A stretch of 64,000 bases of DNA from IMGVR_UViG_3300037882_001770:62001-126000, one strand, 5' to 3'; shown: positions 2 through 60,867, numbered from the stretch's first letter. Numbers and translations: made by a program. Notes: generated by a model from the sequence alone, not told the origin.

Positions 2-664
2 AGAATTGTATTGATCGGGGGTCAACAGATACCAACTGATACTGTACGTATAGCTGGCATATTGATCCAAAATATTAGGTTTAGGAGTTATCCTGGCGTT
101 GTCGCCGCCACCAAACTGTGCGGTGATAATCTGTTGGGCAGTTGCGCCGCCGCCAGATGGAACATTGTCGTCGTTGCGGGCGCCAACACCAGCAGTTTGA
201 TTGGAAGTAGCACCCGGGTCGTTTAAATTTATTGCCGGAGTGCTTTGTGTTTCATCTAATGTGCGAACTTCGTCATCTGTGCCAGATTCTTCTGTGTTGT
301 TTGTTTCGGTTACATACCCAGTTGTTGAATCTGGGGTTAATGTTGTACGGGCCGCGGTGATTCTCCCGACCGGCTCAAGTATTTGATTTGCTGATTGTGG
401 GTTTTGTGTATTTGCTCTATCATCTCGTGCCTGCTGACTCACAGTGACTACTTCACCAGAACTAGCAGTAGACGTAGATTGAACGCCATTTAATTGGTTT
501 CTTAATGCAGTAAGCTCTGCCTGCTGTATCTGCAACTGATCGTTGAGAGCCCGCTCTAGCGTAGCATTACTGCTGTTGATTGCCGCTTGAAGTTGCTGTA
601 TGGTTCGACTAACCTCGTTCTGCAATTTAAAAATTCGAGCAGAAAGTTCGGAACTAGTTGACAT
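2..664 (-). CDS. 5' part of a baseplate hub/tail-associated protein, running off the window start (absent from the ORF track)
   Basis: Manual translation from ATG at 664 gives MSTSSELSARIFKLQ...PKPNILDQYASYTYSISWYLLTPDQYNS with no stop before position 1. It starts just after the stop of 666..965. Confidence 0.6.
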   Translation of the reverse strand, partial: MSTSSELSARIFKLQNEVSRTIQQLQAAINSSNATLERALNDQLQIQQAELTALRNQLNGVQSTSTASSGEVVTVSQQARDDRANTQNPQSANQILEPVGRITAARTTLTPDSTTGYVTETNNTEESGTDDEVRTLDETQSTPAINLNDPGATSNQTAGVGARNDDNVPSGGGATAQQIITAQFGGGDNARITPKPNILDQYASYTYSISWYLLTPDQYNS

Positions 665-665
665 A

Positions 666-3215: not shown

Positions 3216-3244
3216 TTGCAAAACCCAAAATTATCCTGTATACT
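3216..3244 (+). promoter_or_regulatory. sigma70-type promoter, probably leaderless transcript
   Basis: TTGCAA-17-TATACT, ATG at 3252 only 7 nt downstream. Confidence 0.6.
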
Positions 3245-3251
3245 TGATGAT

Positions 3252-4268
3252 ATGACAAATCTATTTCGTAAGACTGCGGTCTGCACAGACATACATTTTG
3301 GATTAAAATCAAACAGTCTTGTACACAATCAAGACTGCTCTGACTTTATTGACTGGTTTATTGATACAGCCAAAAAACAAGGGTGTGAAACCGGAATGTT
3401 TTTAGGCGATTGGCATCATCATAGAGCCAGTATTAATCTACAGACCCTGCATTTTAGTTTAAAAAGTTTACAAAAACTATCTGCGGCATTTGATAATTTT
3501 TATTTTATTCCAGGCAATCACGATCTGTATTATCGAGACAAACGCGACATACACGGAGCAGAATGGGCTCAGCACTTGCCCAATATTCATGTGGTCAACG
3601 ATTGGTTTCACGAAGGCGGTGTAACCATTGCTCCGTGGCTGGTCGGCGATGACCACAAAAAAATACAGAAACTAAACAGTCAGTATGTATTTGGCCATTT
3701 CGAGTTGCCGCACTTTAAGATGAATGCCATGGTAGAAATGCCCGATCATGGAGAGATTCACGTAGATCACTTTAGCGGAGTAGGCGAAGTGTATTCTGGG
3801 CATTTCCATTTGCGACAAAACAAACGCAATATCAACTATATCGGAAACTGTTTCCCCCACAACTTTGCCGACGCCGGCGATGCGGCCCGTGGCATGATGG
3901 TACTAGAGTGGGGGAAACCTGCAAAATACCATGCATGGCCCGGACAACCCCTGTATCGTGTGCTTAAACTGAGCCAGGTCATTGACGATGCGTCCAGTAT
4001 GCTGGCCAGCAACATGCATGTTCGGGTAGAGTTAGACATTGATATCAGCTACGAAGAAGCTAATTTTATTAAAGAAACCTTTATCAAAGATTATAATTTG
4101 CGAGAGATGGCACTGTTACCGGTCAAGAGTACTGCGGTAGATTTAGATCTTGCCCCAGGCGAGATCAAGTTTGAAAGTGTCGACCAAATTGTCACAGATC
4201 AAATCACCAATATTGAGTCTGAGTTTTATGATCCAAAGTTATTGTTAAAAATATATCAAAATCTATGA
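3252..4268 (+). CDS. Recombination nuclease subunit gp47 (Mre11/SbcD-like)
   Basis: Metallophosphoesterase motifs TDIHFG, GDWHH, PGNHD, GHFE, SGHFH; start reassigned to MTNLFRK. Confidence 0.92.
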   Translation: MTNLFRKTAVCTDIHFGLKSNSLVHNQDCSDFIDWFIDTAKKQGCETGMFLGDWHHHRASINLQTLHFSLKSLQKLSAAFDNFYFIPGNHDLYYRDKRDIHGAEWAQHLPNIHVVNDWFHEGGVTIAPWLVGDDHKKIQKLNSQYVFGHFELPHFKMNAMVEMPDHGEIHVDHFSGVGEVYSGHFHLRQNKRNINYIGNCFPHNFADAGDAARGMMVLEWGKPAKYHAWPGQPLYRVLKLSQVIDDASSMLASNMHVRVELDIDISYEEANFIKETFIKDYNLREMALLPVKSTAVDLDLAPGEIKFESVDQIVTDQITNIESEFYDPKLLLKIYQNL

Positions 4269-6028
4269 TTCATATAAAAAATCTAACTGTTAAAAACTTC
4301 ATGAGTGTGGGCAATGCTACCCAAGCTATTGATTTTGACCGCACTGATCTTACCCTGGTACTAGGTGAAAACTTGGATTTGGGTGGTGACGGCAGTCGTA
4401 ACGGCACCGGTAAAACTACAATTATTAATGCTCTTAGCTATGCGTTGTACGGGCAAGCCTTGAGTAACATTCGTAAAGACAATTTAGTAAACAAAACCAA
4501 CGGTAAGAACATGCTGGTCAGCCTAGACTTTATAGTAGGTAGTCAAGAATATCGAATCGAACGTGGGCGCAAACCTAACGTGCTAAAGTTTTATGTAAAC
4601 AACAAAGAACAAGAAATTACCGACGAGGCACAGGGCGACTCGAGAGAAACGCAGGACGCTATTGAGCACACTTTGGGATTAAGCCACGACATGTTCAAAC
4701 ACATTCTAGCACTCAACACTTATACTGAGCCATTCTTGAGTCTTAAAGCAAACGATCAACGCACTATCATTGAGCAACTGCTGGGCATCACAATGTTAAG
4801 TGAACGTGCTGACAAGATTAAAGAACTTAACAAACAAACCAAAGACGGAATTACACAAGAAGAATTTCGGATTCGTGCAGTTCAAGAAGCCAACAAACGC
4901 ATCGAGGAACAGATCGAATCACTTAAACGCAGACAAGTCATGTGGGTGACTAAACATGAAGAAGAGAAAACAAAACTTGAGGCCGCGCTGGCAAGCCTGC
5001 AAGAGATTGACATTACAGCTGAGATTGCGGCACACAAAGAACATTCAGCTTGGGACCAGAAGCGCAAGGATATCAACGAACTATCAGGAGCTATTAGCCG
5101 GGCAAAGACGGATACCGATCGAGAGAATAAAGCCATTGTCAAACTGGAGGCGGAGATTGCGTCGCTTGAAGCTCATACATGCCATACGTGCGGTCAAGCC
5201 TTCCACGACTCCAAGCACCAACAGGTGTTGGCGGGTAAGCAGAAAACTTTGGCAGAGGCGAGAACAGCAAGCCAAGAACATAGCGTTCTCCTATCAGAGC
5301 TACAGGTTGCCCACGACTCCTTGGGCACGTTAGGTAAACCACCTAAAATGTTCTACGACAAAGAATCTGATGCTATTCATCACCAAGCCACATTGACCAA
5401 TTTAGAAAAACAAATTGCCAACAAGGCCACAGAAGTAGATCCGTATACTGAACAAATTGAAGATATGCAACACCAAGCCCTCCAGGAAATCACTTATGAC
5501 ACACTTAATGAACTTACTCGTTTGCAAGAGCACCAAGAATTTCTACTCAAACTGCTCACCAGCAAAGACAGCTTTATCCGCAAAAAAATTATTGAACAAA
5601 ATCTTAGCTATCTAAATGCCAGACTAACACATTATCTAGATCGTGTAGGTTTACCACACACCGTAGTGTTCCAAAATGATCTAACTGTTAGTATCGAAGA
5701 ACTGGGGCGCGAGCTAGACTTTGACAATCTAAGCCGTGGTGAGCGCAATAGGCTGATCCTAAGCATGAGCTGGGCATTCCGTGATGTATTTGAAAGTCTA
5801 TACCAACCCATCAACTTGTTGTTCATAGACGAGATGATTGACAACGGTCTAGATACATCGGGTGTAGAAAATGCGCTGGCATTGCTAAAACAAATGAGTC
5901 GTGAGCGCCACAAGAGTATCTGGTTGGTCAGTCATAGAGACGAACTGGCTGGTCGAGTAGAAAACATTCTCAAAGTGGTCAAAGAAAATGGGTTTACCAG
6001 CTATAATACTGACGTAGAAATTTCATGA
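4265..6028 (+). CDS. Recombination ATPase gp46 (Rad50/SbcC-like)
   Basis: Walker A GSRNGTGKTT, coiled coil with CHTC zinc hook, signature LSRGE, Walker B LLFIDE. Confidence 0.95.
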   Translation: MIHIKNLTVKNFMSVGNATQAIDFDRTDLTLVLGENLDLGGDGSRNGTGKTTIINALSYALYGQALSNIRKDNLVNKTNGKNMLVSLDFIVGSQEYRIERGRKPNVLKFYVNNKEQEITDEAQGDSRETQDAIEHTLGLSHDMFKHILALNTYTEPFLSLKANDQRTIIEQLLGITMLSERADKIKELNKQTKDGITQEEFRIRAVQEANKRIEEQIESLKRRQVMWVTKHEEEKTKLEAALASLQEIDITAEIAAHKEHSAWDQKRKDINELSGAISRAKTDTDRENKAIVKLEAEIASLEAHTCHTCGQAFHDSKHQQVLAGKQKTLAEARTASQEHSVLLSELQVAHDSLGTLGKPPKMFYDKESDAIHHQATLTNLEKQIANKATEVDPYTEQIEDMQHQALQEITYDTLNELTRLQEHQEFLLKLLTSKDSFIRKKIIEQNLSYLNARLTHYLDRVGLPHTVVFQNDLTVSIEELGRELDFDNLSRGERNRLILSMSWAFRDVFESLYQPINLLFIDEMIDNGLDTSGVENALALLKQMSRERHKSIWLVSHRDELAGRVENILKVVKENGFTSYNTDVEIS

Positions 6029-6074
6029 CTTTAAAAAAAATACATTTCCCAAAAGACATGATAACTATAAGTCC

Positions 6075-6503
6075 ATGGTATGGCTTTATGAACAAAAACA
6101 AATCGAAACACTACCCGAAGACTGTGTCGGTTTTGTCTATTTGATTACAAATAACATCACTGGCCGAAAGTATATTGGAAAAAAATTAGCAAAATTTAGT
6201 AAAACTTCATACAAAGTAGTAAAATTAAAGAACGGCAACAAAAAACGCAAGAAAATCAAAAGTAAAATAGATTCAGACTGGCAGCTATACTATGGCAGCA
6301 ACGATCAACTCAACAAAGACATTGCAGAGCTAGGCTCAGACAACTTCACAAGAGAAATATTATTTTATTGCAACTCAAAGGCATCCTGTAGTTACATAGA
6401 AGCTAGAGAACAATTTAATCATAGAGTATTAGAATCAGACGACTACTATAACGGACAGATTGTATGCCGTATACACGGTAGTCACATAAAAAATAAAATT
6501 TAG
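6075..6503 (+). CDS. Small GIY-YIG family nuclease
   Basis: GFVYLITNNITGRKYIGKK and YYGS...E...YN catalytic pattern; basic KLKNGNKKRKKIK insert; no NUMOD tail. Confidence 0.8.
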   Translation: MVWLYEQKQIETLPEDCVGFVYLITNNITGRKYIGKKLAKFSKTSYKVVKLKNGNKKRKKIKSKIDSDWQLYYGSNDQLNKDIAELGSDNFTREILFYCNSKASCSYIEAREQFNHRVLESDDYYNGQIVCRIHGSHIKNKI

Positions 6504-6860
6504 ATAGGCAGCTTTACTGACTCTGTGCTGGGTGTTTGATCCAGCCCCATCGAGGAACGGTGAGATACCCGGTCTAGAACTTTGGGCGTCAAAGGCAATT
6601 GCTAACTTAAGGCAACAAATGGTTAGGGCTCCGTTGAAAAAGATACGACCCTTGCTTATAGGACTTGGATTTATTATCGGGTTACTAGGGTTCCGTTGAT
6701 TTGTGAAGCTAGAGTAAGGGGTACCGGTCAACCGCCTCTGCGTTGGAAACAACAATCTCTTTATAATAAATGACTGCTGTCACTCGGATAATGTGAAAAG
6801 AAGTCAATTCACCGTATTACGGTGAATTGTGACCACATAATCTGGATAATGCTAAAGAAA
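6504..6860 (+). ncRNA. Candidate large structured non-coding RNA (boundaries and strand tentative)
   Basis: Largest gap without a credible ORF. Stems: GCTGG/CCAGC 6527-6545, CTTTG/CAAAG 6580-6594, GTTG-GAAA-CAAC 6742-6753, and the perfect 11-bp CAATTCACCGT/ACGGTGAATTG 6805-6829. Confidence 0.55.
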
Positions 6861-6944
6861 GACAAATAAAAAATTATGTGTGAGCTTTAGCGAAACACAT
6901 AGATCTCTAAGAGATCTCACATAGTCAGCACTAAATAATATACT

Positions 6945-7457
6945 ATGAAAACCCTAAGAGAAATGATGGATTTAATCGAATCTGCTCAAACAGTAGCAGA
7001 ATTCGCACCAAGCGGCATTTATAAACCGCCTGTGATTCCTCGTGAACCTGGTAAGGATCCGTTTGAAGATGATCCCCGTAGCACAACTGTATCCAAAGTT
7101 CAACAACTATTAGACGCCGGCAAGAGTGTATTTGTATTGTTACCGGGTGCTAGAGGTCGTGCAATTGGCACACAAATTGGCGACGATCACTCTTGGTTAA
7201 ATGTTCAATACAAAGGCTGGAAAGATCCTAAGACTCGCAGTAACGCTCGATTAACAGTAAATCTAAAAGCCGACGACGATTCTTCACTAACGCTAACTCC
7301 GGGTAGTCAATTCACTGACAATAAAGATCGCCCATTTGACTATACTTTATCCGGTGAGGCTAAAACCAGCGGTCGCGGATTATTTGAAGTCGAGTTAGAA
7401 GAAGAAATATCCGACGATGCTGTGCGTCGTGTGGAACAACTCGCTCAGTATAAATAA
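6945..7457 (+). CDS. Hypothetical protein, possible internal head protein
   Basis: N-terminus MKTLREMMDLIES resembles a T4 capsid-targeting sequence; TAAATA late promoter 7 nt upstream. Confidence 0.5.
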   Translation: MKTLREMMDLIESAQTVAEFAPSGIYKPPVIPREPGKDPFEDDPRSTTVSKVQQLLDAGKSVFVLLPGARGRAIGTQIGDDHSWLNVQYKGWKDPKTRSNARLTVNLKADDDSSLTLTPGSQFTDNKDRPFDYTLSGEAKTSGRGLFEVELEEEISDDAVRRVEQLAQYK

Positions 7458-7516
7458 AGGTGTAGTTCGCGGGACGGCAATCCCCAACTACTCTAACGCT
7501 TTGAAGGAGCATCAGC
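7449..7516 (+). promoter_or_regulatory. Late promoter plus structured leader of GIY-YIG homing endonuclease
   Basis: TATAAATA, then stems TAGTT/AACTA, GGGA/TCCC and GCT/AGC (the last around the SD); same architecture at 48721-48789. Confidence 0.75.
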
Positions 7517-8092
7517 TTGAAACATATTTACAATAAACTTAATCCCCCATCTGGATTCTACATCTACGCTTATATTAGAGAAAACGGAACACCTTACTAT
7601 ATCGGCAAAGGCAAGGGTATACGAGCCTGGGTAAGTCATGCTAACAAAGGCAAAGGAGCTCATACACCCAAAGACAAATCAAGAATTATAGTTTGTGAAT
7701 CTAATTTAACAGAAATAGGTGCCTTTGCGTTAGAGCGTAGATACATTCGTTGGTATGGACGCAAAGATCTAGGCACAGGTATTTTACTAAACAAAACAGA
7801 CGGTGGCGAAGGCACAGCTAATACCATTAGAACCGTATCGGAAGAAACTAAAATAAAAATTGGATCTGCTAATAAGGGCAGAGTTCAGACCGAAGAAACA
7901 CGAGCTAAACGAAGTGCGTCTCTCAAAGGAAGAAAGCCTTCAGAAGAATCAAACATTAAGCGTGGAGCAAAAGCAAGAGGTAGAGTTCTTGGCCCACAGT
8001 CAGAAGAACGAAAAGCTAAAACAAGTCTTTTAATTAAACAATGGTGGGCGGAACGAAAAGCGTTAGAATTGATCGGGCCAGTCGCGAAATAA
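7517..8092 (+). mobile_element. Free-standing GIY-YIG homing endonuclease with NUMOD3-type repeats
   Basis: [30 protein letters not shown] and [26 protein letters not shown] repeats; TTG start behind AAGGAG. Confidence 0.85.
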
Positions 8093-8398
8093 CGCATGCT
8101 GGATGTCACCTGCTACGAATTGATTGAAGCTCTTGTGTTTAACTTCAAGCTCGCCCTCTAAAGGTGCTACTCGCTTAAAGGCTTCATCCATCTGAGCCAT
8201 GTTTTTAAATTCCATCAAAATCATCCATTCGGGAAGATCCGCTACAGATCGAAAACCCATTTTGCATCTGGTAATTCTGTATGATTCCATTTTGCCTTCT
8301 GAAATCAAATGATCAAAGAAACTTTTCATTCCGTTGACCCATTCTAAATCAGAGATGTCGCCTTCTTTGTTTGCCCAAATTGTGTATAAGTCTGCCAT
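8063..8398 (-). CDS. DUF6614-like protein
   Basis: Pattern YTIWAN...YRITRCKMG...[10 protein letters not shown]...ALFRDWPD recognised from memory. Confidence 0.55.
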
Positions 8399-20271: not shown

Positions 20272-20370
20272 CATAAATACTTGTCAACGTAATACTGCGT
20301 TTTATGCGGGTAATAAACCCCCCGCGTAGCGGCTAGAACCCGCATGGGACTTCTTTAAGGAGAAAACAAA
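20272..20370 (+). promoter_or_regulatory. Late promoter and GC-rich structured 5' leader
   Basis: CATAAATA at 20272; ATGCGGGT (20304) can pair with CCCGCGT (20321) or ACCCGCAT (20338); AAGGAG SD. Confidence 0.5.
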
Positions 20371-21156
20371 ATGGGTCGTCCACTTAAAATTAAAAAAATT
20401 ATCGAAACCGGCGGTAACGGTAAAGATATCGGTTTCAATGCATTTGATCAATTGACAGCACCAACATTGCCAATTGGCGGCACTATGGAATCTAGCATGT
20501 TTCTTGGTGTAGTCGGTGGTGTTCAACCAACTACAATTGCTACGGCAGCATATCCGATTGTTAAATGCGAAGTTAACATTACTAACAGCGCCAGCGGCCA
20601 AACTCCTGGACTAATCATCCGTCAAAAAGGTGCTCGCAAATTCATGGTTGCTACAACAACCGCAATTGATCCTGAAAATGCAGTACCAAACTCAACTGTA
20701 GCGTTGCGTATTGCTGTAGTTGGCGATACAGACTGGTCGGCTATGGGTGCTCCGGTAGGATATGGTATTGGCACAATCTTTACACCAACAGCAGCATCAG
20801 CAGCGGGCACAACCGGCACAGCACAGGAAGTAGGCACATGTGTACTAACTAGTGACCTAACACCAACTGCTGGCAATATGAGCATTAGTTTCTTTGCTGG
20901 CGCATCTGATTCTACTGAACAGGCAATTAGCAAATTAACTAACAAGTTCTTGAGCGACTTTACAGGTGGTGAAACAGGCGGCAGTGCCAATACAGGCGAT
21001 GTTTGGAATCCTGCACTAGTAGCGCAAAACGTTCGTTATGATGCCAATTTCTTCAGCGACGAAGGCACAGAAATCAAGTCTGGTGCCGAAGCAGAAACAT
21101 TTGCCAACACAACTGGCCAATTAGATCTTGCTATTGTTGAAAAATACACTTCGTAA
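20371..21156 (+). CDS. Hypothetical virion structural protein
   Basis: 261 aa, Thr/Ala/Gly-rich, MGRPLK start, IIRQKGARKFMV; strong SD. Confidence 0.55.
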   Translation: MGRPLKIKKIIETGGNGKDIGFNAFDQLTAPTLPIGGTMESSMFLGVVGGVQPTTIATAAYPIVKCEVNITNSASGQTPGLIIRQKGARKFMVATTTAIDPENAVPNSTVALRIAVVGDTDWSAMGAPVGYGIGTIFTPTAASAAGTTGTAQEVGTCVLTSDLTPTAGNMSISFFAGASDSTEQAISKLTNKFLSDFTGGETGGSANTGDVWNPALVAQNVRYDANFFSDEGTEIKSGAEAETFANTTGQLDLAIVEKYTS

Positions 21157-36801: not shown

Positions 36802-36823
36802 AGTCTAGTATTTATGGGCGTGA

Positions 36824-36852
36824 TTGACTTGAAAATCAAAACGTCGTATAAT
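36824..36852 (+). promoter_or_regulatory. Consensus sigma70 promoter
   Basis: TTGACT-17-TATAAT, ATG 6 nt downstream. Confidence 0.8.
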
Positions 36853-36858
36853 TACAAA

Positions 36859-37113
36859 ATGGACGAACTATTTCAACGCCTAGACCTAGCAGAACGTGCT
36901 ATTGCTACAGTTAAAAACAAAGTGGCCAGACGCGACCTGTTAAAAATGGTAAAAGCCATAGATCGAGCTATAGTGACCGCAGATATGGAAAGTGTTGAAT
37001 GTCGCCGTGTTAAAAAAGAAACAGTGCGTTACCGAGAGCTAGTACAAAATGTAAACGATTTACTCACAAATTTGGAGCAACATATAACCTTCGCTAGTTT
37101 ACTTCGTGGTTGA
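36859..37113 (+). CDS. Hypothetical helical early protein (84 aa)
   Basis: Start reassigned to MDELFQRL, directly behind the promoter. Confidence 0.6.
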   Translation: MDELFQRLDLAERAIATVKNKVARRDLLKMVKAIDRAIVTADMESVECRRVKKETVRYRELVQNVNDLLTNLEQHITFASLLRG

Positions 37114-37138
37114 CCTTTTGAATATTTCACTGTAAAAT
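37110..37138 (+). promoter_or_regulatory. sigma70 promoter
   Basis: TTGACC-17-TAAAAT, ATG at 37146 7 nt downstream. Confidence 0.7.
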
Positions 37139-60606: not shown

Positions 60607-60744
60607 AGCGGCAATTATTTAAAACATTTAGAAAAACGTGTGGGGCGAAATGGAACCATTGCATCATTTGACAACCAAGTCCGTGCAAAAATCAAGTTTG
60701 CCGACTTGTTTCAAGTAATAGAGCAAACACAATCATAAATACTC

Positions 60745-60773
60745 TTGACGTTGTACAAGCACTAGTATATACT
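60745..60773 (+). promoter_or_regulatory. sigma70 promoter for the ssb operon, adjacent to a late CATAAATA
   Basis: TTGACG-17-TATACT. Confidence 0.7.
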
Positions 60774-60867
60774 ACACAAGTGATACAAACTTTACAGCAT
60801 CACAGGCAACTTAGATCTAGCAATAGATAGGCAACGCATTTTATAAAACTTAGAAAGGCAACTTAAA

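What the first reader, a model, noticed from the sequence alone, without database searches (positions are those of the whole stretch)
6504..6930. ~420-nt hairpin-dense non-coding region: candidate large ornate RNA
Seen: the only long gap in a gene-dense window, visibly more GC-rich than the preceding gene. It contains stems at 6527-6545, 6559-6569 (GGT-GAGAT-ACC), 6580-6594, 6602-6626, 6742-6753 (GAAA tetraloop) and a long composite stem at 6791-6838 with an 11-bp perfect core. It has an internal repeat TAGGG(C/T)TCCGTTGA at 6624 and 6686, and GGATAATG at 6786 and 6844. CTGACT (6518) could pair with AGTCAG (6923) to close the whole domain. Established: phages carry large structured RNAs such as GOLLD and ROOL. 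Inference: this is a large ncRNA; I could not match it to RNase P, tmRNA or intron consensus by eye.
Basis: partly seen in the sequence, partly recalled or inferred. Interest (0 to 1): 0.8.

Follow-up and report, generated by a model that had tools for sequence, protein, structure and literature searches.

The report
Conserved 400-nt phage RNA behind nuclease gene
The gap holds a real, strongly conserved, roughly 400-base folded RNA that hundreds of freshwater T4-like phages carry right after a small nuclease gene; it is an uncatalogued sister form of the little-known Polynucleobacter-1 RNA, and its function is still unknown.

Summary
Window 6504-6944 is the longest ORF-poor gap in the window. 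On the + strand it encodes a structured RNA of about 400 nt (~6506-6921). I found homologues in over 400 fetched viral and metagenome loci, all freshwater where labelled. Among 97 non-redundant copies, 16 helices (77 bp) are 95% canonical. 47 pairs show two-sided compensatory changes, against 7-15 in slid controls. These include a 7-bp loop pseudoknot. The RNA is better conserved at nucleotide level (median 82.6%) than the neighbouring genes.

No Rfam family matches the window RNA. Its 3' domain (~6655-6921) is homologous to the undescribed 3' part of RNAs whose 5' part is Rfam RF01718 (Polynucleobacter-1, Weinberg 2010). Two mutually exclusive 5' domains therefore share one 3' domain.

A small stand-alone nuclease gene lies upstream on the same strand in nearly every copy with enough upstream sequence. 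It is usually GIY-YIG and sometimes PD-(D/E)XK. One locus is a clear exception.

Two direct 7-mers about 55 nt apart are identical to each other in 239 of 244 RNAs, although at least 12 variants exist. This is unexplained.

Function is unknown. My best guess is a trans-acting, partner-binding RNA made from the 3' end of the nuclease transcript. I class it as a new variant of a known kind.

The parts
6075..6503 (+). Stand-alone GIY-YIG nuclease gene (142 aa, catalytic domain only). It is the constant upstream partner of the RNA.
   Evidence: PF19835 SegE_GIY-YIG E 1.7e-32, phrog_447. It lies upstream of the RNA on the same strand in 282 of 288 viral loci with upstream sequence, and in 95 of 120 metagenome loci.
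6506..6921 (+). The whole structured RNA (approximate ends).
   Evidence: nhmmer profile hit 6505-6927, E 8e-125. The alignment of 97 non-redundant copies loses conservation before ~6506 and after ~6921. G-U pairs fix the strand.
6517..6655 (+). Type A 5' domain, specific to the window-like subfamily. Helices: P1 6519-6521/6588-6590; P1a hairpin 6527-6545 (hypervariable, covarying); P2 6546-6549/6583-6586; P2a hairpin 6554-6575; P3 hairpin 6600-6614; P4 hairpin 6625-6652.
   Evidence: Helices are 97.7-99.6% canonical; P1a is 73% because of alignment slippage. Every helix has 2-6 pairs with compensatory double changes. In type B RNAs this domain is replaced by RF01718, and the two never occur together.
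6662..6683 (+). P5 hairpin. Its loop (6669-6675) forms the pseudoknot.
   Evidence: 7 bp, 99.7% canonical, 3 covarying pairs.
6765..6771 (+). 3' strand of the pseudoknot. It pairs with the P5 loop 6669-6675 (AUUUAUU/AAUAAAU).
   Evidence: 7 bp, 96% canonical, 5 covarying pairs, 70 compensatory cells. Type B RNAs keep the pairing with other sequences (UUAGCGU/ACGCUAA, CUAGUAUU/AAUACUAG).
6684..6710 (+). Almost invariant segment ACUAGGGUUCCGUUGAU.UGUGAAGCU. Its pairing is unproven.
   Evidence: Invariant or near-invariant columns. The RNAalifold hairpin here never varies, so it remains untested.
6711..6760 (+). Junction core. P7 6711-6714/6757-6760 encloses P8 hairpin 6717-6739 (GGGGUACCGG-UCAA-CCGCCUC) and P9 GNRA hairpin 6742-6753.
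   Evidence: The pair flanking P7 switches U-A/A-U 51:45. P8's closing pair switches G-C/A-U 74:22. All 3 pairs of P9 covary.
6783..6793 (+). Twin repeat 1 (CUC-GGAUAAU-G).
   Evidence: The 7-mer is identical to that of repeat 2 in 239 of 244 non-redundant RNAs, although at least 12 variants exist.
6807..6827 (+). P10 hairpin (AUUCACCG-UAUUA-CGGUGAAU) between the twin repeats.
   Evidence: 8 bp, 96.4% canonical. 2 covarying pairs in type A and 4 in the combined A+B set.
6841..6851 (+). Twin repeat 2 (UCU-GGAUAAU-G).
   Evidence: As for repeat 1. Mutual information is 0.85-0.86 bit between equivalent positions, and at most 0.44 with any other column.
6853..6876 (+). A-rich linker of variable length.
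   Evidence: Variable length and sequence in the alignment.
6877..6899 (+). P11 hairpin with a conserved internal UGA/GAA (tandem G-A, k-turn-like) motif and a 2-bp tip.
   Evidence: All 5 pairs of the outer stem covary (115 cells). Both pairs of the inner stem covary. The k-turn-like reading comes from the sequence pattern only.
6901..6917 (+). P12 terminal hairpin. This is the probable 3' end, and it is only a weak intrinsic terminator.
   Evidence: 7 bp. 5 pairs covary in type A and all 7 in A+B. At least 4 U in the next 8 nt occurs in only 34 of 97 copies, and not in the window.

Best explanation
Identity. The interval encodes, on the + strand, a compactly folded RNA of about 400 nt. It is a sister form of the RNA whose 5' third is catalogued as Polynucleobacter-1 (RF01718). 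A subfamily-specific 5' domain (type A here) is fused to a shared 3' domain. The 3' domain holds a hairpin-loop pseudoknot, a three-way junction core, two identical 7-mers flanking a hairpin, a G-A-motif hairpin and a terminal hairpin. A large clade of uncultured freshwater T4-like phages carries it at the end of the rightward replication/recombination gene block (gp47-gp46-nuclease-RNA), facing convergent late genes.

How it most likely works (inference). It is transcribed as the 3' end of the nuclease mRNA. The folded domain then acts as a stable, trans-acting RNA that binds a partner. The two identical 7-mers would serve as twin docking sites for two copies of one partner, protein or RNA. 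The exchangeable 5' domain would be a second, lineage-specific interface.

Shown: conservation, fold, strand, modularity, gene neighbourhood. Inferred: co-transcription, stability, partner binding. I put identity at about 0.9 and the proposed mode of action at about 0.3. The overall confidence given is a compromise between the two.
For: 120 of 120 hits in an independent metagenome scan are true copies. Structure: 77 bp are 95.0% canonical and 47 pairs show double compensatory change, against 36-48% and 7-15 pairs when partners are slid. RNAalifold gives 35 of 70 pairs with compensatory change. The pseudoknot covaries in both types. RNA nucleotide identity to the window (median 82.6%) exceeds that of the gp46 gene (74%) and the GIY gene (77.6%). 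There is no open frame, and lengths fall in all three classes mod 3. The 3'-domain homology with RF01718-bearing RNAs: RF01718 scores 107.9 and 105.4 bits in L078 and L038, directly followed by the shared domain. The same gene association was reported in 2010 (PMC2864571). No conserved promoter lies in front of the RNA where other genes are inserted. Contigs from four metatranscriptome runs cover 6069-6815, and two bridge the gene/RNA junction. Twin 7-mers: 239 of 244 identical, at least 12 variants, and dozens of concerted changes on a tree.
Against: No experiment or strand-specific read data exist. The metatranscriptome contigs carry no direction, may include DNA, and show no discrete RNA ends or excess depth over the gene. 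No partner was identified. No complementary or third copy of the 7-mer sits at a fixed place within 3-4 kb. A protein partner that co-evolves with frequently toggling bases is not an easy explanation for perfect concordance. Cultured relatives that carry the GIY-YIG gene have no room for such an RNA after it, so the RNA is not a general requirement of that gene.
Confidence: 0.5

Rival explanations
1. Cis-acting 3' UTR element. The fold protects or terminates the nuclease/recombination transcript, or tunes expression of the potentially toxic nuclease, and has no life of its own.
For: It starts 0-10 nt after the nuclease stop codon in most loci. It has no conserved promoter of its own. It ends in hairpins at a convergent gene boundary. 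Metatranscriptome contigs bridge gene and RNA.
Against: A 400-nt fold with a pseudoknot, invariant single-stranded stretches and exchangeable domains is far more than 3'-end protection needs. The RNA persists unchanged when 0.8-2 kb of other genes are inserted between nuclease and RNA (39 viral loci), and when the nuclease is replaced by an unrelated fold. P12 is a poor terminator in two thirds of copies.
Confidence: 0.25
2. RNA subunit of the nuclease. The RNA binds the domain-only nuclease and guides, gates or inhibits it, analogous to HEARO/omega RNA with IscB or to RNA antitoxins.
For: The RNA is almost invariably linked to a small nuclease that lacks any DNA-binding domain. It lies directly downstream on the same transcript, as omega RNAs do. 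The basic loop of the RNA-linked GIY-YIG proteins is about 6 residues longer than in RNA-less cultured homologues.
Against: The same RNA, including the twin 7-mers, follows two unrelated nuclease folds: GIY-YIG and PD-(D/E)XK. This is unexpected for a tight, fold-specific ribonucleoprotein. GIY-YIG homologues at 37-48% identity work without it in cultured phages. There is no hypervariable guide-like end segment. One locus (L560) has the RNA with no nuclease. The phages are related and syntenic, so linkage may be inherited position.
Confidence: 0.12
3. Ribozyme or intron-derived element: self-cleaving, self-splicing, or a remnant whose homing endonuclease is the upstream gene.
For: GIY-YIG and PD-(D/E)XK are both classic intron/homing endonuclease families. 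Strongly conserved junction nucleotides and a pseudoknot are typical of ribozymes.
Against: No Rfam hit to any group I, group II or small ribozyme model even at E<=10. gp46 upstream is complete, and in most loci the downstream gene is convergent, so there are no exons to join. The nuclease family is a single-copy conserved gene in cultured T4-like phages rather than sporadic. RNA contig ends show no common cleavage site.
Confidence: 0.05
4. DNA-level element (replication origin, recombination site or homing target). The twin identical 7-mers flanking a palindrome would be crossover or binding sites, which must be identical as in recombinase overlap regions.
For: Identity rather than complementarity of the two 7-mers, with a perfect palindrome between them, recalls sites that must match each other. 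The element lies at the boundary of the replication/recombination and late gene blocks.
Against: Long-range helices, a pseudoknot and many conserved G-U pairs would be A-C mismatches on the other strand, so they make sense only for a single-stranded + strand RNA. No copy lacking the inter-repeat segment was found among 250 non-redundant RNAs.
Confidence: 0.05
5. Decayed coding sequence, for example the lost DNA-binding domain of a Seg-type endonuclease, or chance hairpins.
For: The GIY-YIG protein is shorter than T4 SegE. The single-sequence fold z-score is modest.
Against: The region is more conserved than the flanking genes. Indels fall in all phases, and the longest stop-free stretch has a median of 66 aa in any frame. 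ORFs in the region have no Pfam or PHROG hits. Compensatory changes are massive.
Confidence: 0.01

Closest known systems
Polynucleobacter-1 RNA motif (Rfam RF01718; Weinberg et al. 2010, PMC2864571)
   Same: Same genomic niche: freshwater sequences, directly downstream of the same GIY-YIG gene family (GOS11034 / PSSM2_218-like). RNAs that carry RF01718 continue into a 3' domain of about 270 nt that is homologous to window ~6655-6921. That domain includes the pseudoknot, junction core, twin 7-mers, P10, G-A hairpin and terminal hairpin.
   Different: The RF01718 model (141 positions) covers only the type B 5' domain. The window has a different 5' domain and gives no RF01718 hit at E<=10. The two 5' domains never co-occur. 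Rfam does not model the shared 3' domain, and the paper's supplementary description of the motif does not mention one. [quoted passage not shown]
HEARO / omega RNA of IscB, and TnpB reRNA (nuclease-associated structured RNAs)
   Same: A conserved structured RNA of a few hundred nt, genetically tied to a small nuclease gene and transcribed with it.
   Different: No sequence or model match. There is no guide-like variable end. The same RNA accompanies two unrelated nuclease folds. It sits in a syntenic phage locus, not a transposon.
Large ornate RNAs found near phage genes (GOLLD, ROOL; PMC12286853)
   Same: Phage-borne, multi-helix, pseudoknotted, of unknown function, discovered by comparative genomics.
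   Different: It is half the size or less. No Rfam match. It is not next to tRNAs: there are none in the window. Oligomerisation is untested.
Group I introns with GIY-YIG or PD-(D/E)XK homing endonucleases (e.g. T4 td / I-TevI)
   Same: A nuclease of a homing-endonuclease family next to a conserved structured RNA in a T4-like phage.
   Different: No intron model match and no interrupted host gene. The nuclease precedes the whole fold instead of sitting in a loop.

Membership tests
Polynucleobacter-1 RNA (RF01718) | Match to the RF01718 covariance model at or above its gathering score (37 bits) | tested here: not met
   No RF01718 hit in window 5900-7100 even at E<=10, nor in the whole window at gathering score. 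Bona fide members L078 and L038 score 107.9 and 105.4 bits.
Polynucleobacter-1 RNA (RF01718) | Location downstream of the GOS11034 / PSSM2_218-like gene family in freshwater sequences | tested here: met
   The window RNA starts at the stop codon of the 142-aa GIY-YIG gene. This gene's homologues occur in cyanophages and precede RF01718 in L078 and L038. The 2010 description is. The holding runs are lake and freshwater metagenomes.
Polynucleobacter-1 RNA (RF01718) | Homology to the rest of the RNA that contains the motif (wider family, not part of the Rfam model) | tested here: met
   A profile of type A RNAs hits type B loci over profile positions ~205-422 (E 1e-6 to 1e-24), directly 3' of their RF01718 match.
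Group I intron | Match to group I models (P3-P9 core) and an interrupted host gene | tested here: not met
   No hit at E<=10. gp46 is complete (587 aa), and the downstream gene is unrelated or convergent.
GOLLD / ROOL / HEARO / OLE (large ornate RNAs in Rfam) | Match to the family covariance model | tested here: not met
   The only Rfam hit in the window is freshwater-2, at 20285-20373. Nothing matches in the region at E<=10.
Structured non-coding RNA (generic) | Compensatory base-pair changes beyond controls, no coding signal, defined strand | tested here: met
   47 of 77 pairs have double changes against 7-15 in slid controls; 95% canonical against 36-48%; conserved G-U pairs; indels in all phases.
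Intrinsic terminator (for P12) | GC-rich hairpin followed by a U tract on the RNA strand | tested here: inconclusive
   The hairpin is conserved and covaries. At least 4 U in the next 8 nt occurs in only 34 of 97 copies, and not in the window. The scan tool calls terminator-like sites here only on the - strand.
RNA-guided / RNA-partnered nuclease system | Physical and functional dependence of the nuclease on the RNA | not testable with these tools
   Only genomic linkage could be measured. Replacement of the nuclease fold with the RNA unchanged argues against a fold-specific complex.

The most novel reading that the evidence does not exclude
The RNA is a functional partner of phage recombination/repair nucleases. 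It would be a folded RNA that recruits, gates or templates a stand-alone nuclease domain, GIY-YIG or PD-(D/E)XK interchangeably. Its two must-be-identical 7-mers would mark a mechanism that needs sequence identity between two sites, for example paired docking of two identical molecules or a strand/template-switch-like step. This would be a new kind of nuclease-associated RNA in lytic phages.
Probability: 0.12. Interest if true: 0.9.

Novelty: new variant of a known kind. Interest (0 to 1): 0.62.

Why it matters
Polynucleobacter-1 has sat in Rfam since 2010 as a 141-nt orphan motif with 16 examples and no function.

This work shows four things:
- It is only one of two alternative 5' heads of a much larger RNA of about 400 nt.
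- It is the most conserved nucleotide sequence of its neighbourhood.
- It is tied almost without exception to a small nuclease gene of either of two unrelated folds.

The RNA also carries an unusual evolutionary signature: two sites that must stay identical rather than complementary. Standard RNA covariation tools do not look for this, and it points to an unknown interaction.

If a function is found, it would add a new class of phage RNA. It would also give a handle on the biology of abundant uncultured lake phages.

Tried and rejected
- Rfam at gathering score and at E<=10 on the window region, and on seven divergent loci. Nothing matched the window RNA. This search did reveal RF01718 in type B loci.
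- GenBank phage collection by blastn, for type A and type B RNAs and for the 5-kb neighbourhood. No match, so there is no cultured model.
- Coding or pseudogene reading. Rejected.
- Group I intron reading. Rejected: no model hit and no exons.
- Own sigma-70 promoter. One 9/12 match at 6470-6499, no more than chance, and not conserved where genes are inserted.
- Watson-Crick partner for the twin 7-mers. No column has MI above 0.45 bit. The anti-repeat register 6785-6789/6840-6844 is 85.8% canonical without covariation. No reverse complement or third copy sits at a fixed position within 3-4 kb.
- T4 gene-60-type bypass. Most 7-mers read RGA followed by UAA or UGA, which recalls a take-off codon plus stop. 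However, the phase between the invariant upstream UGA (6771) and repeat 1 differs among copies, no ORF enters it, and variants UCA and CGA exist.
- Mobile mini-element with target duplication. No copy lacks the inter-repeat segment.
- Host assignment from the genome collection. The 17-mer gave mostly chance hits. The three true hits are MAG contigs that are probably phage.
- DenA/EndoII identity of the nuclease. No PDB sequence match.
- A covariance model was not built. The RNA exceeds the size the tool can calibrate, and only sequences already fetched could have been searched.

Full report
THE REGION. Window 6504-6944 lies between a 142-aa ORF (6075-6503, +) and a 170-aa ORF (6945-7457, +). 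It is the longest ORF-poor gap in the window at 441 nt; the next longest are 335, 279 and 261 nt. It is richer in G+C (0.42-0.465) than the preceding gene (0.31-0.345). Upstream lie T4-type gp47 (3216-4268, Mre11/SbcD-like motifs) and gp46 (4265-6028, SbcC-like; phrog_77, E 2e-101). The 142-aa protein is a bare GIY-YIG catalytic domain (PF19835 SegE_GIY-YIG, E 1.7e-32). The window is part of a 317-kb IMG/VR contig. The runs that hold the sequence are lake and freshwater metagenomes. Folding the single sequence gives only modest z-scores (-2.65 on +, -3.84 on -). Hairpin density alone is therefore weak evidence.

IT IS CONSERVED AND IT IS RNA. Loci encoding relatives of the GIY-YIG protein carry the 441-nt sequence at 77-90% identity right after the gene. 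In an alignment of 97 non-redundant copies (A1), RNAalifold predicts 70 pairs, and 35 of them show two-sided compensatory changes. My own search for stacked, covarying column pairs and a fixed helix list give 16 helices with 77 base pairs. Of the cells, 95.0% are canonical. 47 pairs show double compensatory changes (866 cells). When the 3' partners are slid by 1-3 columns, the figures fall to 36-48% canonical, 7-15 pairs and 52-129 cells. Many pairs are conserved G-U, which would be A-C on the other strand, so the RNA is the + strand. Lengths fall in all three classes mod 3. The longest stop-free stretch in any frame has a median of 66 aa. ORFs in the region hit no protein family. The RNA is the best conserved nucleotide sequence of the neighbourhood: median identity to the window is 82.6%, against 74.0% for the gp46 gene and 77.6% for the GIY-YIG gene.

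ANATOMY IN WINDOW COORDINATES.
- 5' domain: P1 6519-6521/6588-6590; P1a hairpin 6527-6545; P2 6546-6549/6583-6586, enclosing hairpin P2a 6554-6575; hairpins P3 6600-6614 and P4 6625-6652.
- 3' domain: hairpin P5 6662-6683, whose loop 6669-6675 forms a 7-bp pseudoknot with 6765-6771 (5 covarying pairs).
- An almost invariant stretch at 6684-6710.
- P7 6711-6714/6757-6760, enclosing P8 6717-6739 and the GNRA hairpin P9 6742-6753.
- Twin repeats 6783-6793 and 6841-6851, flanking hairpin P10 6807-6827.
- An A-rich linker.
- Hairpin P11 6877-6899, with an internal UGA/GAA motif that looks k-turn-like by sequence pattern only.
- Terminal hairpin P12 6901-6917.

Conservation ends at about 6921. P12 is followed by a U tract in only about a third of copies, and not in the window.

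Stem 6580-6594 (70.6% canonical), stem 6602-6626 (79.8%, no covariation) and the closing CTGACT/AGTCAG pairing (38.8%) are not supported. The TAGGG(C/T)TCCGTTGA repeat is peculiar to this window.

RELATION TO A KNOWN FAMILY. Rfam finds nothing in the region even at E<=10. A profile of A1, however, also hits about 35 further GIY-YIG loci over its 3' half only (profile positions ~205-422), beginning about 245 nt after the gene. In those loci the intervening sequence is Rfam RF01718, the Polynucleobacter-1 RNA: 107.9 bits in L078 and 105.4 bits in L038, against a gathering score of 37. Reading L078 shows the RF01718 match followed by counterparts of P5 and the pseudoknot (with different sequences), the GGUACCGGACAACCGCC hairpin, the twin repeats, a P10 hairpin, the G-A hairpin and a terminal hairpin. 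The pseudoknot is kept in type B RNAs with other sequences. Across all fetched loci the two 5' domains are mutually exclusive. One search gave 153 type A against 38 type B. A type-B-specific 17-mer then fetched 106 more type B loci. An independent metagenome scan gave 120 true copies out of 120: 56 type A, 54 type B, and the rest truncated or divergent. Weinberg et al. (2010) described Polynucleobacter-1 from 16 examples. [quoted passage not shown] They also noted that its 3' half is not always detected and that no purified phage carried it (PMC2864571). The window RNA therefore fails the defining test for RF01718 but belongs to the same wider RNA family. It is a sister variant with a different head. 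Neither variant has a blastn match in 50,697 GenBank phage records.

GENOMIC CONTEXT. The phages are related and syntenic: gp46 is 54-87% identical in protein. The common order is gp47, gp46, optional inserted genes (often a radical-SAM/SPASM protein), nuclease, RNA, then convergent minus-strand genes. The convergent genes include DUF6614 and a T4 baseplate-protein homologue. In the window, ORF170 and a Seg-like homing endonuclease (7517-8092; GIY-YIG plus NUMOD3) are inserted between the RNA and the DUF6614 gene.

Among viral loci, every RNA with at least 600 nt of upstream sequence has a small nuclease gene upstream on the same strand:
- GIY-YIG in 282 loci: 243 within 120 nt, and 39 at 0.6-2.1 kb with other genes in between.
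- A 168-aa PD-(D/E)XK nuclease (PF24608, E 2.8e-25) in 6 loci.

In the metagenome sample the counts are 95 GIY-YIG and 7 PD-(D/E)XK. Two contigs there are too short to reach the nuclease. One clear exception, L560, has a MazG-like ORF instead. PD-(D/E)XK occurs with type A and with type B heads, so the nuclease was replaced more than once while the RNA stayed. Conversely, homologues of the GIY-YIG protein (37-48% identity) in cultured T4-like phages have only 29-148 nt before the next gene. These phages include Melnitz, phiN3/phiM12 and cyanophages, and the gene is often mislabelled 'NAD synthetase' there.

EXPRESSION. No conserved promoter precedes the RNA in loci where another gene was inserted upstream. 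The one sigma-70-like match in the window (6470-6499, 9 of 12) is no more than chance. Contigs from four metatranscriptome runs lie on 6069-6815, and two bridge the gene/RNA junction (6408-6656 and 6413-6620). This fits co-transcription. The contigs have no direction, though. They may contain DNA, they come mostly from relatives, and they show no discrete ends or excess depth.

AN UNEXPLAINED SIGNATURE. The two direct repeats vary in concert and identically:
- In A1, positions 6786/6844 are G/G 40, A/A 52, discordant 4.
- Positions 6790/6848 are A/A 48, G/G 44, discordant 4.
- Mutual information between equivalent positions is 0.85-0.86 bit, against at most 0.44 with any other column.
- In 250 non-redundant type A+B RNAs, the 7-mers of the two repeats are identical in 239 of 244 cases. 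There are at least 12 variants, among them GGAUAAU, AGAUGAU, GGAUGAA, AGAUGAG, GCAUAAU, ACAUGAA and AGAUCAA. The spacing ranges from 47 to 68 nt.
- On a tree of the 3' domain with the repeats masked, the 7-mer changes 66-71 times by parsimony. Concordance is 244 of 244 at positions 1 and 5. The counts may be inflated by recombination and tree error. Even so, all combinations of the variable sites occur, which needs repeated concerted changes.
- PD-(D/E)XK-linked RNAs keep the rule.

This is not Watson-Crick covariation. No cis partner or third copy was found. A gene-60-like bypass is excluded by variable phase, and a polymorphic mini-element is excluded because the inter-repeat segment is always present. 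I read the repeats as twin sites that must look alike to one partner. This is an inference.

WHAT IT MOST LIKELY IS AND DOES. Shown: a real structured RNA of about 400 nt, with modular architecture, on the + strand, abundant in uncultured freshwater T4-like phages, next to a nuclease gene. Inferred: it is made as the 3' end of the nuclease transcript and acts as a stable, partner-binding RNA (about 0.3). Rivals:
- A purely cis-acting 3' UTR (0.25). Its complexity, and its persistence when genes are inserted upstream, argue against this.
- An RNA subunit or guide of the nuclease (0.12). The near-universal linkage is attractive, but it is weakened by the swap between unrelated nuclease folds, by RNA-less homologues and by synteny.
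- A ribozyme or intron remnant (0.05).
- A DNA-level site (0.05).
- Decayed coding sequence (0.01).

NOVELTY. The gene association and a 141-nt motif of the sister form were published in 2010. The following are not in Rfam, nor in the one paper of the searchable library that names the motif:
- the type A RNA itself;
- the shared 3' domain with its pseudoknot;
- the two-head modularity;
- the abundance in phage contigs;
- the nuclease-fold replacement;
- the identity-covarying twin sites.

I rate it a new variant of a known kind. Interest is moderately high, because function remains open and the identity signature is unusual.

Noticed in passing
window 20285-20373 (+): Match to Rfam freshwater-2 RNA (RF02980): 69.3 bits against a gathering score of 49.9, directly upstream of an AAGGAG...AUG start region.
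   Followed up: no
L123:5043-5549 (-), also L139, L154, L181, L116, L169 and 7 metagenome loci: In the slot in front of the RNA, the GIY-YIG gene is replaced by a 168-aa PD-(D/E)XK nuclease (PF24608, E 2.8e-25). This is a non-orthologous nuclease replacement at one position, and it occurs with both RNA head types.
   Followed up: partly
GenBank T4-like phages (e.g. KR052482.1 165973-166389; KJ019035.1 151422-151862): Homologues of the 142-aa GIY-YIG protein (PF19835; phrog_447) are annotated 'NAD synthetase' in many cyanophage, Sinorhizobium, Acidovorax and other T4-like phage records. This looks like a propagated misannotation of a single-copy conserved nuclease gene.
   Followed up: partly
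window 6945-8092: ORF170 (6945-7457, no family hit) and a Seg-like homing endonuclease (7517-8092; GIY-YIG plus NUMOD3) are inserted between the RNA and the DUF6614 gene (8063-8398, -). In most related loci that gene follows the RNA directly. The first ~19 residues of ORF170 (MKTLREMMDLIESAQ...) recur in L002-L008 in front of unrelated sequence.
   Followed up: partly
L177:865-1875 (+) and 56 other loci: A radical-SAM/SPASM protein gene (336 aa) sits between gp46 and the GIY-YIG gene in many relatives. Other inserted genes without family hits (264-337 aa) lie between the nuclease and the RNA in about 40 loci. The block is a hot spot for gene insertion, yet the nuclease and the RNA are kept.
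   Followed up: partly
L560:11016-11359 (+): This is the only RNA copy found with ample upstream sequence and no nuclease gene before it. A 98-aa MazG-like ORF precedes it, and a DnaQ-like exonuclease ORF follows about 650 nt downstream. The genomic context differs from all other loci.
   Followed up: no
L389 (NZ_JBBAKG010000003.1, 148-kb contig), L356, L408: The RNA occurs on contigs binned as bacterial MAGs (Haliscomenobacter sp., Flavobacteriales). The 148-kb contig is probably a phage genome binned with a bacterium, so it is not reliable host evidence.
   Followed up: no
window 387-665, 36802-37136, 60607-60867: Three further gaps of 261-335 nt without ORFs of 60 aa or more. There is no Rfam hit at gathering score. 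They were not examined.
   Followed up: no
window 6115-6290 (GIY-YIG protein residues ~44-68): The lysine-rich loop of the GIY-YIG protein (KLKNGNKKRKKIKSK) is about 6 residues longer in the RNA-linked clade (types A and B) than in the RNA-less homologues of Melnitz, phiN3 and a cyanophage.
   Followed up: no
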